DNA of 64,000 nt, taken from positions 18,972,001 through 19,036,000 of the forward strand of contig OZ004614.1 of assembly GCA_963924565.1 (NCBI GenBank). Direction: 5' to 3'. Of this stretch, positions 24,441 to 51,466 are shown one piece after another. Below the pieces are notes generated by a model, which saw nothing but the letters and a program-made list of their open reading frames with translations, did not search any database and was not told the DNA's origin. Origin of the DNA: Ascidiella aspersa. Taxonomy: Eukaryota. Position 1 is the stretch's first letter. Every line of letters begins with the position of its first letter. The translations under genes were made by a program, and so were the position numbers.

Positions 24441-24846
24441 CTCGATGCGTACCCAAGATCTTGGTACGATGAGAAATCTCAAGATGTTTCCGACAGAGCT
24501 TGGGTACGATTCTAAGTCACTCGATGCGTACCCAAGATCTTGGTACGATGAGAAATCTCAAGATGTTTCCGACAGAGCTTGGTACGATTCTAAGTCACTC
24601 GATCCGTACCCAAGATCTTGGTACGATGATAAATCTCAAGATGTTTCCGACAGAGCTTGGTACGATTCTAAGTCACTCGATGCGTACCCAAGATCTTGGT
24701 ACGATGACAAATCTCAAGATGTTTCCGACAGAGCTTGGTACGATTCTAAGTCACTCGATGCGCATCCAAGATCTTGGTACGATACCACATCATCTAATGC
24801 ATATATCCGGTCGTGGTATGATACAGGAAAGGATATCGGCAACTAA
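24441..24846 (+). pseudogene. 5'-truncated WYD-repeat gene copy (10 units, frameshift)
   Basis: Starts mid-unit with no ATG or signal peptide; extra G at ~24502 (gagcttgggtacg); same terminal units and 3' UTR as the intact gene. Confidence 0.85.
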
Positions 24847-29306: not shown

Positions 29307-30491
29307 ATGGAAATTCCTTGCCGAATAATTTTATTTGTTTTACTTGTGGCCACGTGCATGTCAATAAGTGAAGGTAAGTTTTTATTGCCTTATCTGTGAA
29401 AGTTTTTTAAAGTCAATAAAGTATTTTAACACTGTGGCTTAATATTTCCAAACTTGTTGGAAGATCAGGTGCTGTGTGGAAAAATAAATTGCTGCGCCGC
29501 AATTGGTTTTGTGTGAACTCATGCTTTACATCTTGGTTTGAGGTAGGCGACATCAACGAGGCAGATTTGTTATTCGGTGCATTCAAACCTACTGCAGTAG
29601 AACATGGCTATCATCGGGTTATACTTGCCAATACGCCAGACGTAAGGACGTTTGATTTACTTTGTATATACGTTGTTTAACAAACGTTTTCAACACCAAG
29701 TTGTTGGCAGTAATGTCAGTGATAGAATAGAGTAGACGTTAAATGAATTGCCAAAATAATTTCTCTCTCTATAACTTTGCATGTTGCTACAAGCCTACAG
29801 CAGCAAACCAATCCTGTTGAATGACTTGACCTAAGTGCACTTAGGTTACTAAATAAGCTTCTAAATAAGTTTGCTTAACTTAAATCTTTTGGACAGATGA
29901 CGTGAGTTTAACTGATTTATCTTTGTCAATCAGTTTTTTATTTGATAAATTAAGGTAATTATTCTAATTTTGCACATAATAAAATTGGCTTTCTGTATGC
30001 TGCGTTTTTTCTTTATTTTTTAGTTTTTTTTTTTTTGCAGTTGTTTTTTACGTAAAGTTTAATTATTAACAGTTGTTAATCTACTTTTTAATCAATTTAG
30101 ATTTTAGGATCGAATCGCTACGTTAAATCGGAAATCATGGCACAAATGCCATATTTGAGATCGGCACTGATACCACATTAGTATCGGACGAGTAACGATA
30201 GTACCACTTGGCATTGAAAGCAGGTTCGATCCAATATTATCGAGCATTTCTACTCGAAAATGGATGTGGCATACATTTTTGATAAAACCTTTCAACAGAT
30301 TAAAATAATTCGCCGTTGATCCAAAAAAACATTCAGTCAGGTTATTGCGAACTCGTATTAATCTTATCCACCAGGTGCTGAGCAAATTTTATGTTTTTGC
30401 AGATCCTGTTCCCTGCTTTCACTGCCAGTACTTTGTGTGCAGACGTGTTAAATCGTGTCAATCGATTTTTCGCCATCGTTTCTTCTGCTGA
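29307..30491 (+). CDS. Secreted cationic 8-Cys peptide, copy B (84 aa)
   Basis: Exons 29307-29373, 29543-29641, 30403-30491. MEIPCRIILFVLLVATCMSISEG-RRHQRGRFVIRCIQTYCSRTWLSSGYTCQYARHPVPCFHCQYFVCRRVKSCQSIFRHRFFC*. ORF intact, but the exon-2 acceptor is GAG and the ~167-bp TATA-containing segment of copy A is missing, so expression is uncertain. Confidence 0.78.
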
Positions 30492-33400: not shown

Positions 33401-36400
33401 AGAAATTAGTAAGGTACATCTGCGCATAGCTGTTGTAGTTTATATATAACCTACATCAATGTTATCCAAATATTTAACAATTCTTTTTACTTCAGGGGCC
33501 AATGTTTCATGCTGGATCTGCAGCTAACTCTAGGCGATCTCTGCCTAATAAAACACACTAGTTATACAAATATCTAAATTTAATATATAAGTTATTATTT
33601 TAAAAGCAACGCCCTAGCTGACAATTAAAGCGCAGTGCTCCAGTATTACTTAAAAGTTACTTAATTATGGGCGGATCCGGGACACGGCCAGAAACAACTC
33701 AGATATAACGTCATAATTTGACGTCACAAAAGAAATCGAAATAAACCTGGTGTTCTTGAGCAAACTTTATGAAACAGAAGACGAGTCCAAATCATGCCCC
33801 TATTTGATGTTAATAGGCCCGACATGTAATCTCGGAAACTTAAAATAACATTTCCGTTAACAAGTTTCAAAATACAAAAAAAAATCGTGTAAAGTCGCGC
33901 CGAAAAAAGAAAATTACTCAGCAAAACCTAGAAAAATGCAAGAAAATAAAAAAATTAATAAAGTTAAATAATTATCAAAAAATAAACTTGTAGAGGGTGG
34001 TGGTTGATACCCAGGTACTCCCATACACCAGCCTATGGTGTATAATTAAAAAATGACTATACTCTTGTAGGAGTGAAACAAAAGAGGAACAAATGCAGTA
34101 ATGTGTGTGATTTAAAATTGTATTTGGAGCGCATTGGCGTGGGTGGTGTCCTATTTATGATTTAATTGAAAGCGATTTTGACGTTGCAATTTGTGCGCCA
34201 CGGGCAATTGAAGGCTAGCAAATTGAAGGCTAGCTGGAATTGATTGATTTCACAGCTGCAGAGTAACGCCATCATGCGTACAACGTGCAAAAAACAGCAG
34301 CTTCGTTTCGGAGTAAGTAAACCTCGGGACGTTACCTGTTGTTCTGTCCTGCTCTGCAATTCGACTTTTTTACATAGAAACTAAAGAATAGGTGCAACGA
34401 ATATTCCTAGGATTGTCAAATTGCATTTGTAACGGAAACACTATAAGACAGGGGTGTCAAATGAGTTCTGCCATTATCCACCACAGCCAAACCCGACAAC
34501 ATGATGATCCACCAAATGCGAATAGTAAACATATTGGACACGCTTGAATTTTTATGGTGCTTTATTTATGTAAAGGTACCCTACAACATATTGTTAACTT
34601 TGTAAAAGTCAAAGGGAAGTGTGCTACAGCACCAAGATTGTTTCAGTGAGAAAAATGATGAGTTGGTTAAGACCAGGGGCCGGCAACCTTTTTCTAGTCG
34701 CGGTTCAACACCAAACTCAGAAAGGTCTTTGTGGGCCGCACAAAATGTTAACTCAGAATTGTGTTATTAAAATGTTAGAACAACTTTTAATCAGGCGGAC
34801 CTCGGATCTTTTGGAGGCAGTAAAGTGTTGGCGCAAAGCGAGAGAAAAGGCGTTGTTTGGTTTAAAATTCGAGCCCAAACTTCGTCATCCTTACTAATAA
34901 TTAAAAGTGTAATAAAACTTCTTTGAAGAAACGCGATAACTTTAATAGTTAATCTTTGTTTAGTGTTTGCTAACCTTGAAGTCAGGGCGCACGTGGCGAG
35001 CGAGCGAGCGCGAATTTTTCTTAGGTATACCGGCATTTCTTTTAAATTTCTTGCAAGTTTTTATTACATTGCCGAAAATACAAAATGTTTAAAAATATAT
35101 GTCCAATATTTTTTATTGCTATTTCCATTAACGGTAACGAAACGCTGATCTATTTCAAAGGACCGCATCAAAACGTAAACAAGCCGGACGAAGAAAGATG
35201 ATTCGCGCGAAGCGGGGAAATTTTTTAAACTTACGTAGTTAAAATAGTCAAAAAGTATTTAAAATGGACTCGTATCTAGTTTGGAGGGGGAGCGGTGGGC
35301 CGCATGAATGACATTAGCGGGGCGCATCCGGCCGGGAGGCTGTAGGTTGCCGATCGACCCATGTTTCAAACTTTAGGTCGCTGATCGATATCCTCAAACG
35401 CTCACATTAGTATTTGGGAGTCTCGTTTTAAATTTGATTTTTTTGCAAAATCCATCAACACTGATAATTGGTATATATTTATTTTTTCAAGACTACATTA
35501 GTAGATCCGAACAAAACGCTGAGATCCGGAACCGGATCGCGATCAGCCATTTGAACATGACCGCTATAAGAGATTATTATAAGGAAGAAAACGCGAAAAC
35601 CTAAAATAAAAGCATTAGAATAACATCAGAAACAAGAGATTACCACTCAACAGGCAGAACGTGCTGCCTCGAATTGTAATTCACATATTTTGATTCTTTT
35701 CTCGCAGTGTTGCTTTGTATCTGAGCTTGTTTGATTCGCCTTTGCATTGCATGAGAATATAAAGCACAACCTCTAGACACCGCGTATTGCTTCATGGCGT
35801 TACACCTGACAACTGTTGTGAGAGACGTCATAAAGCACCATCCATGTTGTCTAACCGTACGGTGGCACGCTACAACTAGGTCAAAAAATACTTTCTTCTG
35901 CGGATATCGGGTATTATCTATCTATGAAAGTTTTGACAACCTGCAATGATATTTCGTGAAAAAAAAAATTTTTTTTTATTAACATAAATGAAAAGTTTTT
36001 TTCTATTAACATTTTAATTCATTTGCTGTCGCGAATTTCAAGCTGAAAGACGTGTCCATTGTAATCAACAGGAATCGATAATGACACGATGACCTGCTAA
36101 ATGTTCGTGCTGCTGTTTTTTGTACTGTAGCCTAGATTTTTTGGTAAGTTTGTATGAATTTTGTGGTATCTCCGCAGGAAACATTTTTTAAATTTATTTA
36201 TTCACTGAGTATTAAAAGTAACCGTTTGCAAAACAACTGAATTTTATTCTATTAAATGTTCATTATTTGCGATAAATTTATTATTCATTTGCTCACAATA
36301 GACTATTTCGTTAATTCATAAACCCTTTTTATGGAAAGTTAAGCTTAAGCTTAAAGCTGCTTATAAACAGCGAATTATGAACCGCGGGGAAATGGATTTA

Positions 36401-36560
36401 TAAGATCGTAAATCTGAGGTTTTTGTGACAACGTTCCTTCGCAGAGTTTCGCTTTCTTTAAATTTGGTAATATTTATTAGATTACGCAATCATTTACGAC
36501 TGTATCTTTACGTAACACCTTTTGAACACGAACGTTTGCCAATAAGTAAGTTGCTTATTA

Positions 36561-36887
36561 CTCGATGCGTACCCAAGATCTTGGTACGATGAGAAATCTC
36601 AAGATGTTTCCGACAGAGCTTGGTACGATTCTAAGTCACTCGATCCGTACCCAAGATCTTGGTACGATGATAAATCTCAAGATGTTTCCGACAGAGCTTG
36701 GTACGATTCTAAGTCACTCGATGCGTACCCAAGATCTTGGTACGATGACAAATCTCAAGATGTTTCCGACAGAGCTTGGTACGATTCTAAGTCACTCGAT
36801 GCGCATCCAAGATCTTGGTACGATACCACATCATCTAATGCATATATCCGGTCGTGGTATGATACAGGAAAGGATATCGGCAACTAA
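36561..36887 (+). pseudogene. 5'-truncated WYD-repeat gene copy (8 units)
   Basis: Same junction (gttgcttatta|ctcgatgcg) as the 24441 copy, one 78-bp dimer shorter, no start codon or signal peptide in the WYD frame. Confidence 0.85.
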
Positions 36888-37995
36888 TTTCGTAAGGAAC
36901 TGTATATATTTTGATGAAAGAATAGTTTTACAATTTTGATGCATAATTTAAATTGTGTTATTTTTAGATTACCGCTCAACCTGGAGTGTTGTTTGCTCGA
37001 GTGGAAATCTTTGTACATTTCTATATAACCAAGAACATTTCTATATAACCAAGAGCTTTTGAATTTTCAGTAATAAAATAAATGCATTTATCCTGGGAGG
37101 TTCTGTATCAATCTTCTCTAGGTTTTCACCGGACCATAAAAACTAACCTACAAAACAGTTTTAAATAGACAAAACAGTTCATACTAAGATAATTCAAAGG
37201 CTGGTAAAAGTTTTGAGAAGGGACACAGTCACACAAAAGCACAAAATATTTTATATTTGAAACAAACGCTTACATAAATAGCTAACATTAACTAAACCAT
37301 TATTCTCTTATGGTTGATTTTAAGCCTTTAATTAAAATCTGGGCATTTTCCCTCCGATTAATATTGTAATTGGAACGTTTTTTTGCAGATCCTATAATAT
37401 AGGGAATAAGGCTGTTAAAAATATTTGACGTTAATTCCTTGTCGAAAAGTTCGCCGCCTTTGTGAATGCAATGAACAATAGCATTTCTGTCGTATATATT
37501 GCAGAATGTGTCGTAGGATTTTGAACAAAATTATCACAACTATGCAAATCCTATTTAATCGTGCAGCGCGACGAAATTGAAATTCTGGGGCAAAACAATT
37601 TAATGGCGATATGAACAGTTGATATTAACGTCTATAATACGTGGCTTCAGAAAACGTAATCGAGAATGGTACAGCATACTAATTATAAAACAATGATTAG
37701 GTGGCCACAGCTTTAAAATACGGTAATCTGGGATGATCCCGCACAATATTACAGTTATAACCACTGTAATAAATACTTTACATATTTCATACCACGTTAA
37801 AGACGACATTAGATTAAAACTGTTAGATACCCTAACGAACCAGGGGAACGCCGGGCATTTCTTCTAGTATAATATCTCCAAAATAAATCAAACATTACAC
37901 AGTAATACAAATTTCAAACTGCCTCCATAGCACAAATACCAAAACACCGCCAAAAGAAATTCATTTTTTTCTTTGTAAATTCGGTTATGCTAGAT

Positions 37996-39402
37996 CAGGG
38001 GTTCCTAACCTTTTTTGTATGTTTTACCCCTTTAACAAAGATAAATATCAGATTTACCCCCCATTATATAAAATAGTTCTCATCTATGCGAAAAAGGAAA
38101 GTAACAAATTACATCAGGTATAATCAATGCGACGGGTTCCCTTGCGTTTGGCAACGAGTTGTTGTCAAAACATTCCAGTTTGGTCTATTTTTTCATTTCA
38201 GAATGGACAGTTTTGACTAAGAAACGCTAGTTTTTGCTCATCATAATTGGATGAGAATTTGCTAGGTGCCTTTTCAAAGGAGCCGATTTCATTGTAATGT
38301 TTAAAAATGTTTCCACCCACGAGACACACTGAGGAACTTAAAGACCATTCTCAATAAAATATGTAAATCTAAAATTAAAACAATTTTTCTGATACTTTCT
38401 CTTCTTTAGGGAAACGCCATTTTTAAGATTGCATTTTTTGTTACTTTTACAGACTATAATAATCAGTCAATGAGTTCTTTAAAGCCTTAATCATTGGACT
38501 AAAAAGATCAACAATAAACTAACTTGGCCAGTTAAGCCGTACCCAGTGACAAAATTAGGCAATCACATGTATAACCAGCACTGAAATTTCAAAAACTGTA
38601 TCGGAACTTTCAAAACTGCTCGCAGACACGTTCTCCAGTGGTCTCCAATCTTTGAAATAAGCGACCCCAATTTAAATAAGATGTAATCAGAATTTACATT
38701 GCGACCCCATTTTGGAGACAATTATAGGCAATGTTAAAACAAGTGCTAGAATGCAGCAGAACGGGCACCTACTTCGCCGGGGAGTGAAGTGAAAAATTTT
38801 TTTAGCGATAAGTCTCTTCGCCTGTTTGTGTTTCTAAGTGGATATGCTTTCTAATTTGGCCTGTGGAATGCAACCTCAGAAAACGCGGATGTTTTACTAG
38901 AAATCAACAGCATTTGTTATGATGTTACAAATGAGGGACGATTTTAAACATAAACTAAATACATAAATCGTACTAAAACATTACGAATATGGTGAGTTAT
39001 GGCGACCCCACAAAAATTTTAGGCGACCTCTTGAGATCGCGACCCACAGGTTGGAGACCACTGCCTTAATCTATGACGTGACTGCCGAAGAACCTGATTT
39101 ATTCAAACAGTAAATGACGTATTAAAGAAGTAACTGAAAGATAAGGATATTTTCACGAAACTAAAAAAATGATCAATTAGCGAAGCATAACGTTATCGAT
39201 ACAAGGCGATAAAAAATCAATAGGGTACTATAGGCTAGCTTCAAACAAGCAGTTGTAGGAAACTGTGCTACCAATACCTTCAGCTGGCAATATTTTTCTG
39301 TCTCGTCAGCTGATGTGGATATTTTGATTGATAGTTAATTTACCCCCTAAAGTGAGGAAATTTACCTCCAGGGGTAAATTTACCCCCGGTTAAGAAAGGC
39401 TG
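37996..39402. mobile_element. Duplicated copy of the hAT-type element at 25961
   Basis: Same ends and TGCTAGAT TSD within unit B. Confidence 0.85.
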
Positions 39403-41340
39403 TGCTAGATCAAACATCAAAGATAACTCGAGGCGTGGAATTTTCGACCTGGGTTTTAACAGCCGCACTGCGTTATATAATCCTATGTTAGCAACGGATA
39501 TAAAGATAGTACGGCTGAGCACCTCGTAAATTCCTCGTTAAGGTGCGTGCAAAGTCGAGTGAGCAGAAGTGCAGTTCGGGCTCAGCGTAGGCTTGTTAAA
39601 CCGCCTTGGCTGTAAAAACACAGCGAGAAGGCCTCAAAGTGGGCCATGTGGGTTATGCGGTTGCATTCTAAGCGTGGCTTGGGTATCATTGATTAATCCA
39701 TCATCACAGCTTGGTTGGTCGGATATTCATTGCTGTTGCCAAACAAATACTTCTGAACATCTTTTTGATATTTTCTATGTTTTACATACAGCTTCTAACG
39801 TTTTGGGTTTAATAGTAGCTCATATATTCGTAAACTGAACGACACAGCACAATAGAAAATATATTTGCAGCCCATGTTTTTAACTGACATACCTGGGCAA
39901 ACATAATTTAAATACAACTGAGGAGCAAACTATATAGCTTTAGATCTATTCTCTTTGCCAATAAGCGCAATTTTCTGGTTCATTTAATTTTATCTTCTAT
40001 CCGTGATTATATCTTTGAATATTCTGATGAACTGTCAGGCCTCGCGTCTTTCTGCTTCGTGCATTCAAAACGTTTATTTTGCAAAATATAAACTAGTTTT
40101 CCAAAAAAAAAATTCCTTAAAAAAAAAAACACGTAAATGTTTTGTAACGTATGGAGGCGCGAGCACTAATGCAATGTTTTACTTTTCGTAATGTGTTTGG
40201 CGTCATGCGAAGTTGTTATTTCTGCTTTTAAGCTTTTTTAAGCTCTCCTTCTCCAAACTGCCAGGTGAAACCTCGTATATTTACTGCAAAATGTGGTTAT
40301 GGATTTGCGATTTGCAAGTTTCTGAGCTTGAAATTTGATTAGTTTCTTAGTGTTTTGTTAACTTTCAGTTATATTTGGTACTTTTTACGTTCGTTTGGAC
40401 TATGTTTAAACAAAACAATTTGGTAAAAGTTGATCGAGATTCAGGTTTTACACAAGGGCTGTACACCGGACCGTCGTGTCCTTTTTAAAACTATATGTTT
40501 TGCTAACTTTAATAATGCAACTGCAATATTCGCGCGAACCTTCGACTTTCTATTTTTGCCCCCTCCTTTTTTGTAGACATATTTTTAATTTGAAATCTCT
40601 TTAAAATTTAGTATAATTCATTGAATACCGGGTTTATTCAAATAACAATTTTTGCAAACTCTGATAGACATTTTGTTACAACGCTTCTTAAAAATATTTA
40701 TTTTAATTTTATTTGATAACAGACTCGCGCAGCCTGAATTGGGATTTTTATCCGTACGCAAATCAAAAACAGTCTTTGAAAAATGACCATACAGAAACAC
40801 AGTTTATTTTATGATGTTCTTCGCATTTTTTTGCTTGGTTGGAATGTCCTCGTAACATGTGTTTCAAATTCTGATATACTTATCGGGAGCGCAAGACACA
40901 AGAGAATTACAAAGGGGATCGATAGAGCAAAAGGTTAAAAACCACTGCGTTAGACAAATGCAATTTCCCGATGACATCCTAATCTGTCGTTCGTTTTTGT
41001 AATTTCTAAAATCGACATTTATGTATAGGATGAAAACTTACTTTAAAGTCGTGTTTTTATCACTTTGAAGTCTTGTTTTTATCACCGTAATATCGGCAGT
41101 GTAAGATTGGCATCAGATTTCGACTTTGATCCGATATTATCGTCCAACACCAGTAAACCTAATTAGCTTGTTCCTATTTTAAGTTTTTTTCATTTAATTT
41201 ATAAATGATATCCACCTCTCCAATTTCCTTGACAAGAAGTTAAGTACGTTTTCAAAGATAACAATTACACCCATCGTTTTAATTTGTTTGGCAAAGTGCA
41301 CGGTTGAAATTCATTACAGTGACGGAGCAAAAACTAAATA

Positions 41341-42524
41341 ATGGAAATTCCTTGCCGAATAATTTTATTTGTTTTACTTGTGGCCACGTGCATGTCAATA
41401 AGTGAAGGTAAGTTTTTATTGCCTTATCTGTGAAAGTTTTTTAAAGTCAATAAAGTATTTTAACACTGTGGCTTAATATTTCCAAACTTGTTGGAAGATC
41501 AGGTGCTGTGTGGAAAAATAAATTGCTGCGCCGCAATTGGTTTTGTGTGAACTCATGCTTTACATCTTGGTTTGAGGTAGGCGACATCAACGAGGCAGAT
41601 TTGTTATTCGGTGCATTCAAACCTACTGCAGTAGAACATGGCTATCATCGGGTTATACTTGCCAATACGCCAGACGTAAGGACGTTTGATTTACTTTGTA
41701 TATACGTTGTTTAACAAACGTTTTCAACACCAAGTTGTTGGCAGTAATGTCAGTGATAGAATAGAGTAGACGTTAAATGAATTGCCAAAATAATTTCTCT
41801 CTCTATAACTTTGCATGTTGCTACAAGCCTACAGCAGCAAACCAATCCTGTTGAATGACTTGACCTAAGTGCACTTAGGTTACTAAATAAGCTTCTAAAT
41901 AAGTTTGCTTAACTTAAATCTTTTGGACAGATGACGTGAGTTTAACTGATTTATCTTTGTCAATCAGTTTTTTATTTGATAAATTAAGGTAATTATTCTA
42001 ATTTTGCACATAATAAAATTGGCTTTCTGTATGCTGCGTTTTTTCTTTATTTTTTAGTTTTTTTTTTTTGCAGTTGTTTTTTACGTAAAGTTTAATTATT
42101 AACAGTTGTTAATCTACTTTTTAATCAATTTAGATTTTAGGATCGAATCGCTACGTTAAATCGGAAATCATGGCACAAATGCCATATTTGAGATCGGCAC
42201 TGATACCACATTAGTATCGGACGAGTAACGATAGTACCACTTGGCATTGAAAGCAGGTTCGATCCAATATTATCGAGCATTTCTACTCGAAAATGGATGT
42301 GGCATACATTTTTGATAAAACCTTTCAACAGATTAAAATAATTCGCCGTTGATCCAAAAAAACATTCAGTCAGGTTATTGCGAACTCGTATTAATCTTAT
42401 CCACCAGGTGCTGAGCAAATTTTATGTTTTTGCAGATCCTGTTCCCTGCTTTCACTGCCAGTACTTTGTGTGCAGACGTGTTAAATCGTGTCAATCGATT
42501 TTTCGCCATCGTTTCTTCTGCTGA
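41341..42524 (+). CDS. Secreted cationic 8-Cys peptide, copy C (84 aa, same peptide as B)
   Basis: Exons 41341-41407, 41577-41675, 42436-42524; coding sequence matches copy B, with the same GAG acceptor and upstream deletion. Confidence 0.78.
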
Positions 42525-45500
42525 ATTCATCTGCTACCACAGGCTGCTTAATCCGCAAGCCATTTCAGCTCCTGTACCAAAGAGTTTTTTTCACACTTTA
42601 CCCAACATTGATACAAAACAGTTAATAACTTAACCAGCAATCTGCGTATAACGATCGTTTTAATCAAAGATCGCTTGTCACCAACTTTTTGCCAGCAAGT
42701 TCTTTCTTTTGCGCCCTTGATTTGTAAATAAAATTTCCAAATACAAAATTTTAACTTTTAGCAATAGACATTGCCTTTTTTGTAAAATCAGCGTAAGTGC
42801 AGTCAATTTGCTTGAACGTGTATCACAAGGGTGGAATATATATCTTCATTTGTCTTGTCGTAAAAATAAAAAAGGTTATACCGATAATTCATTCAAACAG
42901 CGAAATAATATCATTTTCCACATTACCGTACAATATCTATCCATGAGGGTGGAAATGTAGTTTATCTAATAAGGTTTTGATGCAAAGTTCCAATTAAGAC
43001 GTTGGGGGTTCCCAACCTTTTTTACATCTTAGCCCCCTATGAAAAATTTGAGGAATCAATGCCCCCATATTTTTCTAAACGTTTTAAAAAAATAAGAAAC
43101 TTCATTTTAAATGATAATACTGTTAACCTGTAGTTAGTTTAGAATAATAAAATGATATAAATACAACACCAGGGACGTGCAGTCAGGGGAAGCAGGTGAG
43201 ACACTGCCTCACTTGTCAACATCTGGCAAAGCAAAAGATCAAGCAAAAGTTATATCAGTTATATTTAGGTTTCTATACCTAAATCGTGCTTTATTTTTCT
43301 TCTATTTCTGTTGCGTTATTCATATCAAGCGTTCACGCAGTCAAAATCATTAAAATACGCGAAGAGAGGCAACGCCAAACCGTGACTCTCTTCACAAAAG
43401 TGCCATACACTGCATTATGCGTGCCTTTTTGTTTCGCAAATTCTCTCGGAAAACATGATGAACGATTTAGCTATGTTTTGAGGCATGCCTCAATTGTGAG
43501 TTGTGACGTCCAAGCTATAAAACTTTTCTTCGTCCAGCTTGAATGCCCGCATAGTACGTGTACATTGACTTCTTGCAGTTTAAAGCTCTAAAGTTAAGGT
43601 CATAATTAAAGGCAGACCTGATGCAAATTTAAAAGTTTTGCATCAGACGACTGGACAAAAAAATAACACACAACTTAAGAGATTGGTAAAAAAGAAGTGG
43701 ATGTGTGGCTGTCACAGGCGTAGCCAGGGGGCCATGGCCACCCAAAAATTTATAAATATTGTGCTCTTAAAAATAATTTGTTTTGTAGCTTTTATGAGCA
43801 GTGGTCTATCACAACAGTCGACCACAGGCATGCCACACCTTCGATTGTCATTCACTGTTACGTCATAAATGATGTAGTCATTGTTACGTTTGCTATATTA
43901 ATGTAATTTTACTACTTTTTTTCCATTTTTTTTGCTCTCTGAATGGTTTTTGAGTGTTTTTTTTTTAATTTTCAATAGTACGATACCGTTTTTGTGGTTG
44001 TTAAAAAAAACTGGACTCGAAAAATTTTGTGCCTCACCATCTAGAAACCTCACCGCATCCTCACCGCACGTCACACAATAAACATGATGGTACATTATTT
44101 ATTTATTACTAGGGCGATATTTTGTTACTTTTTTCAAGTCAAAGTCGATCAAATATGCACACAAATCGTTTACAAAAGAAAAAAACTCTAGTAAGATTTT
44201 CAAAACAGTCGTTCAATTAAAATGTTATCGTAAAAAATAGCTTTGAGTATTATATTCAACGACATTTTAACTGTATTATGTCTTCTTAATATAGGGTATA
44301 CGAGCTTGCAGAATTACCCAGGCCTAGTTTATCGCATTGGGCTCACCTCGAACTTCGTTTTGCATTACAGTTTGTTTATCTGATTTGGACAAACTTATTG
44401 AACAATATCTGTTGTCTTTTTCACTTGTGAATTGCAATTATCCAATTTCCTATTTAGACAGGGGTCCACAGTAATTTTATGGAATAATTTTTATGTTGTG
44501 TTTCAACTGTTAACACAACATTTTTCTACAACAATCAGCGTTTAGTTTGTTTGTATTTTTCAAATGACGAAAATAATAACTAAGCATTTTCACGAGTTTT
44601 GCTTAAACGCGAAAGTGTAACTGATTTGCAATCGCCCATTGTCAGTAAAGCATCTATAAAACGTGTGGTTGACGATGCCAAGACACGAATGGAGTACTTA
44701 AAACAACAATATGGGGTTTAAATCAAATGTAGTTCTTATCTAAAAGGTTAAAATTTGGTCAAAAAATATATTTTTTGGTCAAAATGTCTTACAAATTCAG
44801 TTAATGTTATGGTTGAACTTGTTTTTGCTCTGACAATGTCCTAATTGAGGGCTTAATGGTGGAAAAACCCAGCCGCATGTCATACTAACTATCCAACACA
44901 TTGCGCTGCTTCGTCTTCAGAAGTAATATTGTTGAAAACCCATATTCATAACGATATGTTGATGGAAAAGGCAGCAGCAATGGCATGACAATATCATTAG
45001 GCTTACTGTCCTTGTCAAAGCTAAATCGGGTTGTCGTCTTTATTGCGGCCTTTTGGTTCGTTAAATTTTATTTATTTTTTTGTTATAGTGGAGACTTAGA
45101 GATATTAAACTGAAAAAATGTATTTTTAACTTTTTTTATGGGGCCCCTTGAAAAAGGCTCATGGGCCCCTAGGGAACCATGGCCCTCAGGATGTTTTAGT
45201 GTTATGTTGTTTCAACAAAGTAAGCACTTCAAAGTTGGTTATAATTTGCGTTTGTTTGTATATTATATGTTACATAATTAATGCTCTTATTTCAGTTAGA
45301 TTTTTTAGGAAAATCTAGACAAATTAACTGGGCGTTAATACGTTTAAATTATATGAGCCGTAAAACTACTCGCCGAAGTATTGGTTGCGTTGGCCTAAAA
45401 CTGTACACGCCTCCATTAATGTGTATAAAGCGAGAAATTAGTAAGGTACATCTGCGCATAGCTGTTGTAGTTTATATATAACCTACATCAATGTTATCAA

Positions 45501-48500
45501 AATATTTAACAATTCTTTTTACTTCAGGGGCCAATGTTTCATGTTGGATCTGCAGCTAACTATAGGCGATCATCTCTGCCTAATAAAACACACTAGTTAT
45601 ACAAATATCTAAATTTAATATATAAGTTATTATTTTAAAAGCAACGCCCTAGCTGACAATTAAAGCGCAGTGCTCCAGTATTACTTAAAAGTTACTTAAT
45701 TATGGGCGGATCCGGGACACGGCCAGAAACAACTCAGATATAACGTCATAATTTGACGTCACAAAAGAAATCGAAATAAACCTGGTGTTCTTGAGCAAAC
45801 TTTATGAAACAGAAGACGAGTCCAAATCATGCCCCTATTTGATGTTAATAGGCCCGACATGTAATCTCGGAAACTTAAAATAACATTTCCGTTAACAGGT
45901 TTAAAAATACAAAAAAAAATCGTGTAAAGTCGCGCCGAAAAAAGAAAATTACTCAGCAAAACCTAGAAAAAGACAAGAAAATATAAAAATTAATAAAGTT
46001 AAATAATTATCAAAAAATAAACTTGTAGAGGGTGGTGGTTGATACCCAGGTACTCCCATACACCAGCCTATGGTGTATAATTAAAAAATGACTATACTCT
46101 TGTAGGAGTGAAACAAAAGAGGAACAAATGCAGTAATGTGTGTGATTTAAAATTGTATTTGGAGCGCATTGGCGTGGGTGGTGTCCTATTTATAATTTAA
46201 TTGAAAGCGATTTTGACGTTGCAATTTGTGCGCCACGGGCCATTGAAGGCTAGCTGGAATTGATTGATTTCACAGCTGCAGAGTAACGCCATCATGCGTA
46301 CAACGTGCAAAAAACAGCAGCTTCGTTTCGGAGTAAGTAAACCTCGGGACGTTACCTGTTGTTCTGTCCTGCTCTGCAATTCGACTTTTTTACATAGAAA
46401 CTAAAGAATAGGTGCAACGAATATTCCTAGGATTGTCAAATTGCATTTGTAACGGAAACACTATAAGACAGGGGTGTCAAATGATTCCTGCCACGATCCA
46501 CCACAGCCAAACCCGACAACATGATGATCCACCAAATGCGAATAGTAAACATATTGGACACGCTTGAATTTTTATGGTGCTTTATTTATGTAAAGGTACC
46601 CTACAACATATTGTTAACTTTGTAAAAGTCAAAGGGAAGTGTGCTACAGCACCAAGATTGTTTCAGTGAGAAAAATGATGAGTTGGTTAAGACCAGGGGC
46701 CGGCAACCTTTTTCTAGTCGCGGTTCAACACCAAACTCAGAAAGGTCTTTGTGGGCCGCACAAAATGTTAACTCAGAATTGTGTTATTAAAATGTTAGAA
46801 CAACTTTTAATCAGGCGGACCAAAGTGTTGGCGCAAAGCGAGAGAAAACGCGTTGTTTGGTTTAAAATTCGAGCCCAAACTTCGTCATCCTTACTAATAA
46901 TTAAAAGTGTAATAAAACTTCTTTGAAGAAACGCGATAACTTTAATAGTTAATCTTTGTTTAGTGTTTGCTAACCTTGAAGTCAGGGCGCACGTGGCGAG
47001 CGAGCGAGCGCGAATTTTTCTTAGGTATACCGGCATTTCTTTTAAATTTCTTGCAAGTTTTTATTACATTGCCGAAAATACAAAATGTTTAAAAATATAT
47101 GTCCAATATTTTTAATGCTATTTCCATTAACGGTAACGAAACGCTGATCTATTTCAAAGGACCGCATCAAAACGTAAACAAGCCGGACGAAGAAAGATGA
47201 TTCGCGCGAAGCGGGGAAATTTTTTAAACTTACGTAGTTAAAATAGTCAAAAAGTATTTAAAATGGACTCGTATCTAGTTTGGAGGGGGAGCGGGGCGCA
47301 TCCGGCCGGGAGGCTGTAGGTTGCCGATCGACCCATGTTTCAAACTTTAGGTCGCTGATCGATATCCTCAAACGATCACATTAGTATTTGGGAGTCTCGT
47401 TTTAAACTTGATTTTTTTGCAAAATCCATCAACACCGATAATTGGTATTCACATGAAAACACTGTAGAAAGTTTATTTTTTCAAGACTACATTAGTAGAT
47501 CCGAACAAAACGCTGAGAAGATCCGGAACCGGATCGCGATCAGCTATTTGAACATGACCGCTATAAGAGATTATTATAAGGAAGAAAACGCGAAAACCTA
47601 AAATAAAAGCATTAAAATAACATCAGAAACAAGAGATTACCACTCAACAGGCAGAACGTGCTGCCTCGAATTGTAATTCACATATTTTGATTCTTTTCTC
47701 GCAGTGTTGCTTTGTATCTGAGCCTGTTTGATTCGCCTTTGCATTGCAGGAGAATATAAAGCACAACCTCTAGACACCGCGTATTGCTTCATGGCGTTAC
47801 ACCTGAGAACTGTTGTGAGAGACGTCATAAAGCACCATCCATGTTGTCTAACCGTTTTTTATTAACATAAATAGAAAGTTTTTTTTTATTAACATTTTAA
47901 TTTATTTGCTGTCGCGAATTTCATTAAAGCTGAAAGACGTGTCCATTGTAATCAAAAGGAATCGATAATGACACGATGACCTGCTAAATGTTCGCGCTGC
48001 TGTTTTTTGTACTGTAGCCTAGATTTTTTGGTAAGTTTGTATGAATTTTGTGGTATCTCTTTCGACTAAATTAAATTTGAACAACATGCGGTTAATTGAT
48101 TTTCATTTTATTATTTTCGGAACTGTAGATTCCGCAGGAAACATTTTTTAAATTTATTTATTCACTGAGTATTAAAAGTAACCGTTTGCAAAACAACTGA
48201 ATTTTATTCTATTAAATGTTCATTATTTGCGATAAATTTATTATTTATTTGCTCACATTAGACTATTTCGTTAATTCATAAATCCTTTTTATGGAAAGTG
48301 TACAATACCACTGGCAAACCGGCAAAACGTTTAACAAATCCTAATACAATCTCTATAAATATATATGATGTAAGTTAAGTTAAGTGTGAGTTTTGCGGCT
48401 ATGAACAGTTTAAGCCAGATCAATGTTAAGCAAATAATTTTATATTCGCTTTATATTTTCTCGTAAGCGCTAATCATGTACGTAATCATGTAAAACCAAA

Positions 48501-48762: not shown

Positions 48763-48814
48763 TATAAATAGACTTCCGCTTGTCCGACTCGCCTATTCAA
48801 ACAAAAATATAAAA
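48763..48814 (+). promoter_or_regulatory. Candidate TATA boxes of the WYD precursor gene
   Basis: TATAAATA at 48763-70 and TATAAAA at 48808-14, about 80 and 35 bp before the ATG. An alternative is an upstream non-coding exon (donor 48030|gtaagt, acceptor catag|48831). Confidence 0.45.
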
Positions 48815-48843
48815 AGGGTCGCTTCCATAGTTGAACAGCAATC

Positions 48844-50580
48844 ATGAAAATGTTGTCTAAAGGAGTTTATATCATATTGTTTCAAGTCCTTTTCCACCTT
48901 TGCAATGGAAAGGCGTTAGTTAAAAAAAAACATGTTTCTGGCAGAGCTTGGTACGATTCCAAGTCACTCGATTCGCATCCAAGATCTTGGTACGATGACA
49001 AATCTCAAGATGTTTCTGACAGAGCTTGGTACGATTCTAAGTCACTCGATGCGCATCCAAGATCTTGGTACGATGAGAAATCTAAAGAAGTTTCCGACAG
49101 AGCTTGGTACGATTCTAAGTCACTCGATGCGCATCCAAGATCTTGGTACGATGAGAAATCTCAAGATGTTTCCGACAGAGCTTGGTACGATTCTAAGTCA
49201 CTCGATGCGCATCCAAGATCTTGGTACGATTCTAAGTCACTCGATGAGCATCCAAGATCTTGGTACGATGAGAAATCTCAAGATGTTTCCGACAGAGCTT
49301 GGTACGATTCTAAGTCACTCGATGCGTACCCAAGATCTTGGTACGATGAGAAATCTCAAGATGTTTCCGACAGAGCTTGGTACGATTCTAAGTCACTCGA
49401 TGCGCATCCAAGATCTTGGTACGATGAGAAATCTCAAGATGTTTCCGACAGAGCTTGGTACGATTCTAAGTCACTCGATGCGTACCCAAGATCTTGGTAC
49501 GATGAGAAATCTCAAGATGTTTCCGACAGAGCTTGGTACGATTCTAAGTCACTCGATGCGCATCCAAGATCTTGGTACGATTCTAAGTCACTCGATGAGC
49601 ATCCAAGATCTTGGTACGATGAGAAATCTCAAGATGTTTCCGACAGAGCTTGGTACGATTCTAAGTCACTCGATGCGCATCCAAGATCTTGGTACGATGT
49701 AAAGTCTCAAGATGTTTCCGACAGAGCTTGGTACGATTCTAAGTCACTCGATGAGCATCCAAGATCTTGGTACGATGAGAAATCTCAAGATGTTTCCGAC
49801 AGAGCTTGGTATGATTCTATGTCACCCGATGAACATCCACGATCTTGGTACGATGTAAAGTCTCAAGATGTTTCCGACAGAGCTTGGTACGATTCTAAGT
49901 CACTCGATGCGCATCCAAGATCTTGGTACGATGAGAAATCTCAAGATGTTTCCGACAGAGCTTGGTACGATTCTAAGTCACTCGATGCGCATCCAAGATC
50001 TTGGTACGATGAGAAATCTCAAGATGTTTCCGACAGAGCTTGGTACGATTCTAAGTCACTCGATGCGTACCCAAGATCTTGGTACGATGAGAAATCTCAA
50101 GATGTTTCCGACAGAGCTTGGTACGATTCTAAGTCACTCGATGCGCATCCAAGATCTTGGTACGATGAGAAATCTCAAGATGTTTCCGACAGAGCTTGGT
50201 ACGATTCTAAGTCACTCGATGCGCATCCAAGATCTTGGTACGATTCTAAGTCACTCGATGAGCATCCAAGATCTTGGTACGATGAGAAATCTCAAGATGT
50301 TTCCGACAGAGCTTGGTACGATTCTAAGTCACTCGATGCGCATCCAAGATCTTGGTACGATGTAAAGTCTCAAGATGTTTCCGACAGAGCTTGGTACGAT
50401 TCTAAGTCACTCGATGAGCATCCAAGATCTTGGTACGATGAGAAATCTCAAGATGTTTCCGACAGAGCTTGGTACGATTCTAAGTCACTCGATGCGTACC
50501 CAAGATCTTGGTACGATACCACATCGTCTGATGCATATATCCGGTCGTGGTATGATACAGGAAAGGATAACGGCAACTAA
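48844..50580 (+). CDS. Secreted multi-core peptide precursor (578 aa): signal peptide, Lys-rich pro-segment, 42 x 13-aa R[AS]WYD repeats
   Basis: Uninterrupted 1737-nt ORF. Hydrophobic N-terminus MKMLSKGVYIILFQVLFHLCNG, then KALVKKKHVSG, then 42 units (19 RAWYD, 23 RSWYD; last unit 12 aa). TATA-like boxes at 48763-48770 and 48808-48814; AATAAA at 50766. The last unit encodes RSWYD with different synonymous codons (CGG TCG TGG TAT GAT vs AGA TCT TGG TAC GAT), which identifies this as the selected frame. Confidence 0.92.
   Translation: MKMLSKGVYIILFQVLFHLCNGKALVKKKHVSGRAWYDSKSLDSHPRSWYDDKSQDVSDRAWYDSKSLDAHPRSWYDEKSKEVSDRAWYDSKSLDAHPRSWYDEKSQDVSDRAWYDSKSLDAHPRSWYDSKSLDEHPRSWYDEKSQDVSDRAWYDSKSLDAYPRSWYDEKSQDVSDRAWYDSKSLDAHPRSWYDEKSQDVSDRAWYDSKSLDAYPRSWYDEKSQDVSDRAWYDSKSLDAHPRSWYDSKSLDEHPRSWYDEKSQDVSDRAWYDSKSLDAHPRSWYDVKSQDVSDRAWYDSKSLDEHPRSWYDEKSQDVSDRAWYDSMSPDEHPRSWYDVKSQDVSDRAWYDSKSLDAHPRSWYDEKSQDVSDRAWYDSKSLDAHPRSWYDEKSQDVSDRAWYDSKSLDAYPRSWYDEKSQDVSDRAWYDSKSLDAHPRSWYDEKSQDVSDRAWYDSKSLDAHPRSWYDSKSLDEHPRSWYDEKSQDVSDRAWYDSKSLDAHPRSWYDVKSQDVSDRAWYDSKSLDEHPRSWYDEKSQDVSDRAWYDSKSLDAYPRSWYDTTSSDAYIRSWYDTGKDNGN
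48943..50577 (+). repeat. Coding minisatellite, 39-bp unit arranged mostly as a 78-bp A/B dimer
   Basis: AGA(G/T)CTTGGTACGAT recurs every 39 bp with two alternating spacer types (SKSLDAHP / EKSQDVSD). Units 15-22 recur as units 32-39. Confidence 0.97.
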
Positions 50581-51466
50581 TTTGGTAAGGAACTGTTTAT
50601 ATTTTGATGAAAGAACAGTTTTTGCAATTTTGATACATAATTTAAATTGTGTTATTTTTAGATTACCGCTCAACCTGGAGTGTTGTTTGCTGGAGTGGAA
50701 ATCTTTGTACATTTCTATATAACCAAGAACATTTCTATATAACCAAGAGCTTTTGAATTTTCAGTAATAAAATAAATGCATTTATCCTGGGTGGTTCTGT
50801 ACCAATCTTCTCTAGGTTTTCACTGGACCAAAAAGTAACCCGCACAACAGTTTTAAATAGACAAAACCGAACAATGATAATTCAAAGGCTGGTAAAGGTT
50901 TTGGGCAGGGACACTGTCACACAAAAGCACCAAATATTTTATATTTGAAACAAACGCTTACATAACTAGCTAACATTAACTAAACTTATTCTCTTATGGT
51001 TGATTTTTAAGCCTTTAATTAAAATCTGGGCAGTTTCCCTCCGATTAATATTGTAATTGGAACGTATTGTTGCAGATCATATAGTATAGGGAACAAGGCT
51101 GTTCAAAAGATTTGGCGTTAAATCCTTGTCGAAAAGTTCGCCGCCCTTGTGAATGCAATGAACAATAGCATTTCTGTCGTATATATTGCAGAATGTTCCG
51201 CAAGATTTTGAACAAAATTATCACAAGCTATATGCTATTCCTATCTGAGCGTGTAGCGCGACGAAATGGAAATTCAAGGGCAAAAAAATTTACTGGCGAT
51301 ATGAACAGTGTTTATGTGTGTATTGATATTAACGACTATAATAAGTGGCTTCAGAAAAAGTAATCGAGAATGGTATAGCATAATAATTATAAAACAGTGA
51401 TTAGGTGGCCACAGCTTTAAAATACGCAAATCTGGGATGATCCCGCAAAATATCACAGTTTAAACC

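What the first reader, a model, noticed from the sequence alone, without database searches (positions are those of the whole stretch)
48844..50580. Secreted 42-core R-[A/S]WY-D polyprotein: candidate animal ribosomal precursor of Trp-Tyr small peptides or metabolites
Seen: signal peptide followed by 42 units of 13 aa in which only R-[A/S]-W-Y-D is invariant. Spacers vary and are fully diverged in the last two units, and the last core is kept through synonymous codons. There are no KR/RR or Gly-amidation sites in the array, so it is not a typical neuropeptide precursor. Known: leader plus many short aromatic cores with acidic spacers is the architecture of fungal dikaritin/KEP and plant BURP-type RiPP precursors. 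Ascidian blood cells contain short modified Tyr/Trp peptides (tunichromes, plicatamide with C-terminal decarboxy-dehydro-DOPA, halocyamines with DOPA and bromo-dehydrotryptamine; styelin D with 6-bromo-Trp and DOPA). Sponge clionamide and celenamides end in bromo-Trp-dehydro-(T/D)OPA-amine, a Trp-Tyr skeleton. Inference: cleavage after Arg and before Asp would give 19 Ala-Trp-Tyr and 23 Ser-Trp-Tyr per chain as substrates for hydroxylation, halogenation or oxidative decarboxylation. Alternatives are 13-mer signalling peptides (possibly Tyr-sulfated) or an uncleaved DOPA-type structural/adhesive protein.
Basis: partly seen in the sequence, partly recalled or inferred. Interest (0 to 1): 0.92.

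Follow-up and report, generated by a model that had tools for sequence, protein, structure and literature searches.

The report
Secreted Trp-Tyr-Asp repeat gene family
This is an intact sea-squirt gene for a secreted, acidic, probably unfolded protein carrying 42 copies of the motif Arg-x-Trp-Tyr-Asp, one of at least eight such genes in this genome; selection keeps the motif, but no evidence yet shows that the gene is expressed, cut into peptides or turned into small metabolites.

Summary
Window 48844-50580 (+) is one 578-codon ORF: a signal peptide, an 11-residue linker and 42 R-[A/S]-W-Y-D cores at an exact 13-residue spacing.

The array is young: DNA copies are 90-95% identical, the true unit is 26 aa and there is a 351-nt higher-order repeat. 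Conservation inside the array therefore proves little.

The useful evidence comes from paralogues. Four other genes in this genome have the same plan and keep R-x-W-Y-[D/N] in 135 of 137 cores (the other two read K-A-W-Y-G). Spacing varies from 8 to 37 residues, mostly 8-13, and Arg is written with five codons. A second cluster of three genes without the Arg, already noted by this scan on other DNA (s1-793698), keeps W-Y-D in two genes and W-x-Y in the third. One of them places a tetrabasic site directly before A-W-Y-D.

Outside this genome I found no homologue, Pfam family, reproducible fold or paper. One RNA run gave no reads, without a control.

Function is open:
- polyprotein cut after the conserved Arg into 12-13-mers: about 0.38;
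- uncut multivalent aromatic/Arg polymer, possibly DOPA- or bromo-Trp-modified: about 0.35;

The parts
48763..48769 (+). TATA-like box (TATAAAT) 81 nt upstream of the ATG
   Evidence: It has no counterpart in the paralogues, so it is probably not the promoter element in use.
48808..48818 (+). TATAAAAAGGG box 36 nt upstream of the ATG, the likely core promoter
   Evidence: All four R-family paralogues carry CATAAAAGG or CATAAAAAG about 45-50 nt upstream of their ATG.
48844..48909 (+). Signal peptide, 22 codons, predicted cut after Cys-Asn-Gly and before Lys23
   Evidence: Read by rule: basic n-region, 12-residue hydrophobic core, small residues at -1 and -3. The paralogues end their signal peptides the same way, C-x-G followed by K or R. 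SignalP was not available.
48910..48942 (+). [quoted passage not shown]
48943..50580 (+). Array of 42 x 39 nt (13 aa) R-[A/S]-W-Y-D units; real unit 78 nt, higher-order repeat 351 nt; the TAA stop at 50578-50580 is the 13th codon of the last unit
50766..50776 (+). Two overlapping AATAAA polyadenylation signals, 185 nt after the stop
   Evidence: They are retained downstream of both truncated copies.
24440..24846 (+). 5'-truncated copy of the gene: nine cores counting one broken by an extra G near 24505, plus the 3' UTR; no start codon, signal peptide or promoter
36560..36887 (+). Second 5'-truncated copy: 8 cores plus the 3' UTR; no start codon, signal peptide or promoter
24519..47855 (.). Two tandem units of about 12 kb, 98.7% identical, each starting inside a truncated array; an older third unit lies upstream (about 14300-24500). 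The intact gene sits at the downstream end.
   Evidence: Self-BLAST. A short-read contig branches at 48299 into the junction sequence of the truncated copies (table 7, compared).

Best explanation
The ORF is an intact, single-exon member of a lineage-restricted ascidian gene family. The family has five R-x-W-Y-D genes, plus a related cluster of three W-Y-D genes without the Arg.

Shown: each gene encodes a signal peptide followed by an acidic (pI about 4.5-5.3), very hydrophilic, Cys-free tandem array. In the one paralogue that was modelled no fold is predicted. Selection acts on the five-residue motif and not on the spacers. The motif is therefore a short linear recognition element presented many times in the secretory pathway.

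Inferred, as my preferred mechanism: the protein is a polyprotein. After signal-peptide removal it is cut on the carboxyl side of the conserved Arg. It would release about 42 acidic peptides of 12-13 residues that begin x-W-Y-D: roughly 19 of the AWYDSKSLDAHP type and 23 of the SWYDEKSQDVSD type. The paralogues would give 7-12-mers. The adjacent Trp-Tyr, and the Tyr next to Asp, would be the likely targets of modification (hydroxylation, halogenation, sulfation). The protease, any modification and the tissue are all unknown.
For: Gene reality and family:
- Start codon, signal peptide, TATAAAAAGG box shared with the paralogues, and AATAAA.
- Four paralogues on contigs C4, C5 (two genes) and C8 are collinear with the window gene from signal peptide to C-terminus; the aligned pair scores BLASTP E = 5e-57 at 37% identity, almost all of it in the cores.

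Motif under selection:
- The five genes hold 179 cores: 177 with Arg, 2 with Lys, and Trp-Tyr invariant. Periods are 8, 9, 12, 13 or 16. Arg is written AGA, AGG, CGA, CGC or CGG; Tyr as TAC or TAT.
- Inside the window array, minor codon variants run 5 synonymous: 0 non-synonymous in the core against 5: 26 in the spacers.

Cut after Arg:
- The 65-aa relative at C5:21020300-21020494 places a canonical tetrabasic site (RRRR) immediately before A-W-Y-D, in the same register as R-A-W-Y-D here.
- Some paralogue units read K-R before the core: 6 in the C4 gene, 5 in the C8 gene, 1 in the second C5 gene.
- Both spacer types of the window gene have Lys at P8 of the proposed site, a position used at monobasic prohormone sites (general knowledge).
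- The residue after the Arg is always small or polar.

Little sign of a stable fold:
- The paralogue model has mean pLDDT 35.
- The window model reaches 66.8 in only one of five models and has no PDB match.

Precedent: animal-encoded multi-copy secreted precursors, with up to 25 copies, exist in sponges (PMC10945851).
Against: - No transcript was seen: 0 reads of an RNA run of the same species on 47900-48990, with 6% of the run read and no control.
- The array has no dibasic or Gly-basic sites.
- The residue before the Arg is often Asp, Glu or Pro, which prohormone convertases disfavour (general knowledge).
- In the 8- and 9-residue paralogue units there is no upstream basic residue at P4, P6 or P8.
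- K-R and L-R alternate freely at the same spacer position, so the dibasic form is not selected.
- The 282-aa relative keeps 28 W-Y-D cores with almost no Arg.
- The conserved part would sit at the N-terminus of each product, whereas bioactive peptides usually conserve the C-terminus.
- The 65-aa relative keeps three W-Y motifs in one predicted mature peptide, which points to multivalency rather than release of single motifs.
Confidence: 0.38

Rival explanations
1. It acts as an uncut multivalent polymer. The protein is secreted or stored in granules as a disordered chain. The Trp/Tyr/Arg motifs act as 'stickers' (cation-pi and aromatic contacts), possibly after oxidation of Tyr to DOPA/TOPA and bromination of Trp. 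The acidic Ser/Asp/Lys spacers keep the chain soluble. It would serve in cross-linking, coacervation or adhesion in the tunic, blood-cell granules or egg/larval coats, like the ascidian polyphenolic polypeptides morulin Pm and ferreascidin, or like mussel foot proteins.
For: - Composition: 15.6% Trp+Tyr, 7% Arg, net charge -34, GRAVY -1.6, no Cys in the mature chain.
- No confident fold in the paralogue.
- Long arrays of 38-42 cores in four of the five R-family genes.
- Relatives that keep several W-Y-D motifs in one chain, with or without the Arg.
- No conventional processing sites.
- Morula cells of an ascidian contain a polypeptide with both TOPA and 6-bromo-Trp whose gene is not reported (PMC3039461).
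- By general knowledge, most lineage-specific secreted short-repeat proteins of marine invertebrates are structural or adhesive.
Against: - A sticker role does not explain the strict positional invariance of Arg two residues before Trp and of Asp or Asn after Tyr, while spacing is free.
- A tetrabasic cleavage site abuts A-W-Y-D in the short relative.
- No expression or modification data exist.
Confidence: 0.35
2. Cuts after Arg and before Asp excise 19 Ala-Trp-Tyr and 23 Ser-Trp-Tyr tripeptides. These are then hydroxylated, halogenated or oxidatively decarboxylated into small Trp-Tyr metabolites, making this an animal RiPP-type pathway.
For: - The W-Y pair is the invariant centre of every core.
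- Position 5 is Asp or Asn, a pair tolerated by Asn/Asp-specific endopeptidases (general knowledge).
- BrTrp-dehydro-DOPA/TOPA-amine skeletons exist in clionamide and the celenamides. Plicatamide suggests that tunichrome-like compounds arise from longer peptides, and the route is unresolved, ribosomal or non-ribosomal (PMC3039461).
- Animal multi-core RiPP precursors exist in sponges (PMC10945851).
- The genome encodes tyrosinases and many haem peroxidases.
Against: - No cleavage or product evidence exists.
- The Trp-Tyr-ordered compounds are from sponges. Halocyamine, as I recall it, has the order DOPA-Gly-Trp (general knowledge; the order is not given in the passages read).
- The tripeptide N-terminus would vary (A, S, Q, T, M, L).
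- The Arg-less relatives could not be processed in this way.
- No modifying-enzyme gene of the two families tested lies near any family locus.
- A cut between Tyr and Asp has no known animal secretory protease (general knowledge).
Confidence: 0.07
3. The window gene is a recently expanded, poorly expressed or unexpressed copy, with no function of its own. Its open frame would be a by-product of stop-free repeats.
For: - The array is young, at 90-95% DNA identity.
- Another frame of the same array is also open for up to 256 codons.
- Two dead 5'-truncated copies lie 12 and 24 kb upstream.
- No RNA reads were laid.
- The protein is on record in no public protein set.
Against: - The start codon, signal peptide, promoter box and poly(A) signal are intact and shared with the paralogues.
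- Codon variants in the core are 5 synonymous to 0 non-synonymous.
- The last core is kept through three synonymous changes.
- The W-Y-D frame is the only frame shared by all the paralogues.
Confidence: 0.08
4. It is a folded beta-solenoid or functional-amyloid-like fibre in which each 26-residue unit forms one rung, with Trp/Tyr ladders.
For: - The best AlphaFold2 model of residues 1-293 is periodic beta structure, with mean pLDDT 66.8 and pTM 0.67.
- The weak top Foldseek rows are beta-helices, curli CsgA and FapC.
Against: - The other four models score 31-53.
- No PDB match reaches E <= 0.001.
- The paralogue with irregular 8/9/13-residue units is predicted fully disordered, with pLDDT 35.
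- Spacing is not conserved in the family.
- AlphaFold2 is known to build solenoids from perfect repeats (general knowledge).
Confidence: 0.04

Closest known systems
Sponge proline-rich macrocyclic peptide (PRMP) precursors (Lin et al. 2024, PMC10945851)
   Same: Both are animal-encoded and have a signal peptide followed by highly repetitive elements, with up to 25 copies per precursor. Paralogues diversify by tandem duplication.
   Different: PRMP precursors have conserved recognition sequences (Lys-Lys-Gln and Phe-Met-Pro types) around hypervariable Pro-terminated cores. They contain introns, and their products were confirmed by mass spectrometry. Here a 5-residue motif is conserved and the rest drifts, the gene has no intron, there is no Pro rule and no product is known. 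There is no sequence similarity.
Fungal dikaritin / Kex2-processed repeat precursors (e.g. the ustiloxin precursor UstA) and plant BURP-type precursors (general knowledge; plant review PMC11253845 listed)
   Same: A leader is followed by many short aromatic cores separated by spacers.
   Different: Those cores are flanked by Kex2 Lys-Arg sites, or are fused to a BURP cyclase, and sit in gene clusters with tyrosinase or DUF3328 oxidases. The window array has no Lys-Arg, and no tyrosinase or peroxidase gene lies near any family locus.
Multi-copy neuropeptide or defence-peptide polyproteins (FMRFamide- and Antho-RFamide-type precursors, apidaecin, nematode YGGW/YGGY NLP peptides) (general knowledge)
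   Same: A signal peptide is followed by tens of tandem copies with acidic spacers, and a basic residue is conserved in every unit.
   Different: This gene has no dibasic sites and no Gly for amidation, and the conserved part would be the N-terminus of each product. The peptides would be strongly acidic.
Ascidian blood-cell polyphenolic peptides and polypeptides: morulin Pm, ferreascidin, tunichromes, halocyamines, plicatamide (review PMC3039461)
   Same: All come from ascidians. They are Tyr- and/or Trp-based, and morulin Pm carries both TOPA and 6-bromo-Trp in one polypeptide. Their genes and biosynthesis are unknown, so a Trp-Tyr-rich secreted protein is a fair candidate of this class.
   Different: No sequence comparison was possible, because the morulin paper is not held. 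No evidence of modification or blood-cell expression exists here. None of the named small compounds has the order x-Trp-Tyr.
Tandem-repeat marine adhesive or cement proteins (mussel foot protein 1 decapeptides; Perna viridis Pvfp-1 with modified Trp) and profilaggrin (general knowledge)
   Same: They are secreted or stored, disordered, short-repeat proteins rich in aromatic and charged residues. Profilaggrin shows that an animal repeat protein can be broken down into small functional molecules.
   Different: They have different repeats and composition and share no homology. The mussel proteins are basic, whereas this family is acidic.

Membership tests
Multi-core RiPP-type precursor (sponge PRMP or fungal dikaritin logic) | N-terminal signal or leader peptide | tested here: met
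   A 22-residue signal peptide read by rule. The C-x-G / K cut site is conserved in the paralogues. SignalP was not available.
Multi-core RiPP-type precursor (sponge PRMP or fungal dikaritin logic) | Each core is flanked on both sides by conserved recognition or cleavage sequences | tested here: inconclusive
   One conserved Arg lies upstream of each W-Y and Asp or Asn lies downstream. There is no Lys-Arg in the window array, and the Arg is absent from the 282-aa relative.
Multi-core RiPP-type precursor (sponge PRMP or fungal dikaritin logic) | Dedicated modifying or processing enzymes (linked or co-expressed) | tested here: not met
   The closest listed tyrosinase (PF00264) or animal haem peroxidase (PF03098) match lies about 2.8 Mb from a family locus. 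Linkage is not required in animals, and co-expression could not be tested.
Multi-core RiPP-type precursor (sponge PRMP or fungal dikaritin logic) | A modified peptide product that matches the core | not testable with these tools
   This needs LC-MS/MS. Predicted masses are given.
Classical prohormone or neuropeptide polyprotein | Dibasic (KR, RR) or Gly-basic sites flank every copy | tested here: not met
   The array holds 0 KR and 0 RR, and the only Gly-Arg is at the first core. KR appears only as a variable K/L alternative in three paralogues.
Classical prohormone or neuropeptide polyprotein | Conserved C-terminal part of each released peptide | tested here: not met
   With a cut after Arg, the conserved x-W-Y-D would be N-terminal and the C-terminal part would be variable.
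Classical prohormone or neuropeptide polyprotein | Expression in neurons or endocrine cells | not testable with these tools
   One RNA run was laid and gave 0 reads, with no control and unknown tissue.
Ascidian DOPA/TOPA and bromo-Trp blood-cell polypeptides (morulin Pm class) | Secreted or granule polypeptide rich in Tyr and Trp | tested here: met
   7.3% Trp and 8.3% Tyr, with a signal peptide.
Ascidian DOPA/TOPA and bromo-Trp blood-cell polypeptides (morulin Pm class) | TOPA/DOPA and 6-bromo-Trp residues; morula-cell origin; sequence match to morulin Pm | not testable with these tools
   The primary paper is not held. The class is described only through the review PMC3039461.
Pfam PF11246 Phage_gp53 (the only Pfam row) | A domain match that passes on its own | tested here: not met
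   24.2 bits summed over the repeats, with 0 stretches passing individually. This is a low-complexity artefact.
Beta-solenoid or functional amyloid (curli-like) | A reproducible, confident repeat fold shared by family members | tested here: not met
   One model of five reaches pLDDT 66.8, no PDB match reaches E <= 0.001, and the paralogue scores pLDDT 35.

The most novel reading that the evidence does not exclude
The W-Y-D genes are the ribosomal templates for a so far unassigned class of ascidian Trp/Tyr-derived small molecules or heavily modified short peptides (hydroxylated, brominated or decarboxylated x-Trp-Tyr units). That would be the first RiPP-like multi-core pathway in a chordate and a genetic entry point to the unresolved biosynthesis of tunichrome-, halocyamine- and morulin-type compounds.
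Probability: 0.07. Interest if true: 0.9.

Novelty: new variant of a known kind. Interest (0 to 1): 0.55.

Why it matters
How ascidians make their modified Tyr/Trp peptides (tunichromes, halocyamines, plicatamide, morulin) is still unknown; the review PMC3039461 leaves open whether the route is ribosomal or non-ribosomal. This genome holds eight secreted genes whose only selected feature is a Trp-Tyr-Asp motif repeated up to 42 times. That gives concrete, mass-predictable candidates that a single peptidomics or expression experiment could test. If the proteins turn out to be uncut polymers, they would still be a new sequence class of acidic, Trp-rich repeat protein from a cellulose-making, DOPA-using animal, of interest for marine adhesion and tunic biology. 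If the gene proves silent or the product unremarkable, the finding reduces to an orphan repeat family.

Tried and rejected
- **Pfam.** The only row is Phage_gp53, a repeat artefact.
- **Word-indexed protein searches.** I queried the window protein, the C5 paralogue and the 282-aa relative. The first gave only P0001, a non-secreted protein with loosely spaced W-Y-D from an ENA assembly and no Pfam family; the other two gave nothing.
- **Full HMMER scan of 1.84 billion representatives.** It returned 68 low-complexity hits. The best, P0002, is a 13-residue E-E-V-W-Y-D-K-E-S repeat without a signal peptide, on a contig next to a THAP gene. I judge it convergent.
- **ESM Atlas, twice.** Scores were 0.76-0.77 (semenogelin and per-hexamer repeat clusters), below any useful level.
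- **Structure.** The solenoid-like model of the window protein was not reproduced in the paralogue and has no PDB match.
- **RNA evidence.** The RNA run gave 0 reads from 6% of the run, which the tool itself calls no test. The DNA contigs confirm the locus.
- **Enzyme linkage.** No tyrosinase or animal peroxidase gene lies near any family locus.
- **Literature.** No paper holds any of six core strings in a relevant context, and none links W-Y-D with tunicates. The morulin Pm paper is not held.
- **L008.** This locus, a 3729-codon open frame with 34% similarity, was set aside as a likely compositional match without reading the frame.
- **Duplicated 12-kb unit.** It holds no ORF of 75 aa or more that looks coding.
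- **Not attempted.** Species identification, because names are coded, and cross-species tblastn in other tunicate genomes, because no such collection is offered.
Full report
**1. The observation**

Window 48844-50580 (+) is a single 578-codon ORF. The nine-base string for Trp-Tyr-Asp occurs 42 times inside it, always 39 nt apart, and never on the minus strand. The cores are 23 RSWYD and 19 RAWYD, with 41 intervals of exactly 13 residues.

Tandem Repeats Finder shows that the real unit is 78 nt (26 aa: an RAWYDSKSLDAHP-type half and an RSWYDEKSQDVSD-type half). The copies are 90% identical, and there is a 351-nt higher-order repeat at 95%. So the array is young.

Inside it Lys7, Ser8 and Asp10 are almost as constant as the core. 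'Only the core is invariant' is therefore literally true but weak evidence when taken alone.

The remaining details hold:
- The last two spacers are diverged, and the last core is written with different Arg, Ser and Tyr codons.
- The array contains no KR or RR, and its only Gly-Arg is at the first core.
- The window has no N runs.

**2. It looks like a real gene**

- The N-terminus has a basic n-region, a 12-residue hydrophobic core and small residues at -3 and -1 (Cys-Asn-Gly before Lys23).
- A TATAAAAAGGG box lies 36 nt upstream of the ATG, and two AATAAA signals lie 185 nt after the stop.
- The mature chain would be 556 aa, 66.9 kDa, pI 4.9 and GRAVY -1.6, without Cys or N-glycosylation sequons.
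- Minor codon variants among the 42 units are 5 synonymous and 0 non-synonymous in the five core codons, against 5 and 26 in the eight spacer codons (Fisher p = 0.0007). Variants copied by the higher-order repeat are not independent.

**3. Context in the window**

The intact gene sits at the downstream end of a tandemly repeated segment of about 12 kb. Units 24519-35858 and 36560-47855 are 98.7% identical, and an older unit lies upstream.

Each unit starts inside a 5'-truncated copy of the gene (24440-24846, with an extra G that shifts the frame, and 36560-36887). These copies keep the last eight or nine cores, the C-terminus and the 3' UTR, but have no start codon, signal peptide or promoter. 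They are dead copies made by duplication with a breakpoint in the array.

A short-read contig branches at 48299 into the junction sequence of the truncated copies, so both junctions are present in reads. The duplicated unit holds no convincing ORF.

**4. The family**

It holds four further genes with the same plan:

| Gene | Length | Cores |
|---|---|---|
| C4:242363-243898 (-) | 511 aa | 38 W-Y, 37 in R/K-x register |
| C8:12550224-12551528 (-) | 434 aa | 41 |
| C5:31917221-31918525 (+) | 434 aa | 41 |
| C5, 5 kb downstream of the previous gene | 259 aa from the signal-peptide Met | 18 |

- All are single ORFs with signal peptides ending C-x-G before K or R.
- The two 434-aa genes end like the window gene (W-Y-D-S-K-K-N-A-[E/K]-N against W-Y-D-T-G-K-D-N-G-N).
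- All four carry a CATAAAAGG or CATAAAAAG box 45-50 nt upstream of the ATG, matching the window's box.
- BLASTP of the window protein against the C5 paralogue is collinear from signal peptide to C-terminus (E = 5e-57, 37% identity), with the identities concentrated in the cores.

Across the five genes there are 179 cores:
- Arg occurs in 177 and Lys in 2. Trp and Tyr are invariant.
- Position 5 is Asp in 148 and Asn in 29. Position 2 is A, S, Q, T, M or L.
- Core-to-core spacing is 8, 9, 12, 13 or 16 residues, with units such as RQWYDSAD, RQWYNNDAE and RTWYDAKVDPSSL.
- Arg is written with five codons from both codon families, and Tyr and Asp with two each.

The selected object is the five-residue motif.

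**5. A second subfamily without the Arg**

A genome-wide pattern search found another array at C5:21.03 Mb. That region holds three small genes on one strand:
- a 282-aa protein with 28 W-Y-D cores at a 9-residue spacing (WYDQPKAEN and WYDHHKAGS units), almost without Arg;
- a 67-aa protein with W-x-Y cores;
- a 65-aa precursor in which a tetrabasic site (RRRR) is followed directly by A-W-Y-D and a 27-residue acidic tail that holds two more W-Y motifs.

Their signal peptides all start M-N-K-L. Their ATG is immediately preceded by a polypyrimidine tract plus AG, which reads as a splice or trans-splice acceptor. The R-family has a TATA-type box instead.

Similarity of the window protein to the 282-aa protein is limited to W-Y-D (E = 2e-4), so common descent is uncertain. 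This cluster is what the earlier first-stage note s1-793698 described. The scan had therefore already met the motif on other DNA of this genome.

**6. Outside this genome**

- Pfam gives only a repeat artefact.
- Three word-indexed searches of 5.8 billion proteins, a full HMMER scan of 1.84 billion representatives and two Atlas look-ups found no secreted homologue.
- The best rows (P0001, P0002) have W-Y-D-containing repeats but no signal peptide and a different context. I take them as convergent.
- A DNA run labelled as a second organism holds 21% of the sampled words and matches the upstream region with a few differences. A close relative or another population therefore probably has the locus.
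- No paper holds the core strings in a relevant context.

**7. Structure**

- AlphaFold2 on residues 1-293 gave one periodic beta model (pLDDT 66.8, pTM 0.67). The other four models scored 31-53.
- Foldseek found nothing at E <= 0.001. The weak top rows are beta-helices and curli-type amyloids.
- The C5 paralogue, whose units are irregular, is predicted disordered throughout (pLDDT 35).

The family does not conserve spacing, and AlphaFold2 tends to build solenoids from perfect repeats (general knowledge). I therefore read the family as probably intrinsically disordered, carrying a short linear motif.

**8. Expression**

The RNA run gave 0 reads from the 6% of the run that was read. The tool flags this as no test without a control stretch. 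Transcription is therefore unproven.

**9. What it does**

Shown: the protein is secreted, acidic, predicted disordered in the paralogue modelled, and has a multi-copy motif under purifying selection.

Inferred: strict positional invariance of R-x-W-Y-[D/N] while spacing is free points to recognition by a specific macromolecule, either an enzyme or a partner. A loose compositional role would not need it.

I weigh two main readings almost equally.

(a) Polyprotein cut after the Arg (0.38).
- For: the Arg is invariant through five codons. The tetrabasic site sits in the same register in the 65-aa relative. Some paralogue units read K-R. Both window spacers have Lys at P8.
- Against: acidic residues or Pro before the Arg; the free K/L alternation; the Arg-less 282-aa member; and conservation at what would be the peptide's N-terminus.

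(b) Uncut multivalent polymer (0.35). Trp, Tyr and Arg would act as stickers, possibly after DOPA/TOPA and bromo-Trp modification, as in morulin Pm, a morula-cell polypeptide with both modifications (PMC3039461).
- For: the composition, the array lengths, and relatives that keep several motifs in one chain.

It has no direct support and several difficulties:
- the first residue of the tripeptide would vary;
- the Arg-less relatives could not be processed this way;
- no animal secretory protease is known to cut between Tyr and Asp;
- the known Trp-Tyr compounds come from sponges;
- no tyrosinase or peroxidase gene is linked to any family locus.

I give it 0.07.

**10. Comparison and novelty**

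The gene works like a multi-copy secreted precursor or repeat protein, which is a known kind. It is not a member of any named family.
- It fails the defining tests of classical prohormones: dibasic or Gly-basic flanks, and a conserved peptide C-terminus.
- It lacks the two-sided recognition sequences and the confirmed products of RiPP precursors.

I rate it a new variant of a known kind. It forms an orphan family of eight genes, so far specific to this lineage, with an unusual invariant Trp-Tyr-Asp motif.

I score interest at 0.55. The family makes an old question about ascidian Tyr/Trp peptide biosynthesis directly testable with predicted masses. At present neither expression nor any product is shown.

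**11. Operator notes**

- No N runs were touched.
- Read laying received 1091 letters.

Noticed in passing
window 14300-48300: A segment of about 12 kb is repeated in tandem. The two younger units are 98.7% identical and the older one 89-94%. Their boundaries fall inside the W-Y-D array, and each junction leaves a dead 5'-truncated gene copy. No coding ORF was found in the unit.
   Followed up: partly
G000:C5:21020300-21028233 (loci L039, L040), minus strand: A cluster of three small secreted genes of 65, 67 and 282 aa, with M-N-K-L signal peptides and W-Y-D or W-x-Y cores but no conserved Arg. The 65-aa gene has RRRR directly before A-W-Y-D. In all three the ATG follows a polypyrimidine tract plus AG, the form of a trans-splice or 5'-UTR intron acceptor.
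   Followed up: partly
upstream of the five R-family genes (window 48808-48818; L004, L005, L006, L007): All five genes share a (C/T)ATAAAA(A)GG box 36-50 nt upstream of the ATG, which implies very short 5' UTRs and a common promoter type.
   Followed up: partly
L004, L005, L006 (paralogue arrays), opposite strand and other frames: ORFs of 383-406 codons run on the antisense strand of the paralogue arrays. The window gene has no antisense ORF, so these are by-products of stop-free repeats and not genes.
   Followed up: yes
P0002 on L042:2717-3781 (ENA assembly contig): An unrelated protein has a 13-residue E-E-V-W-Y-D-K-E-S-M-x-x-K repeat with the same period and W-Y-D. It has no signal peptide and lies next to a THAP-domain gene. 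I take it as convergent or transposon-associated.
   Followed up: partly
G000:C5:30796877-30797788 (L008): An open frame of 3729 codons gives a weak (34%) match to the array. I set it aside as a likely compositional match without reading the frame.
   Followed up: no
window 62189-63355: Another first-stage note (s1-791112) proposes a small prepropeptide gene here. I did not examine it.
   Followed up: no
G000:C7:22.76-22.84 Mb, C3:26.05-26.07 and 26.53-26.54 Mb, and C8:5.85-5.91 Mb: These regions hold dense tandem clusters of animal haem peroxidase exons, and a smaller tyrosinase cluster lies at C1:6.25-6.30 Mb. They were seen while testing for linkage and are far from all W-Y-D loci.
   Followed up: no
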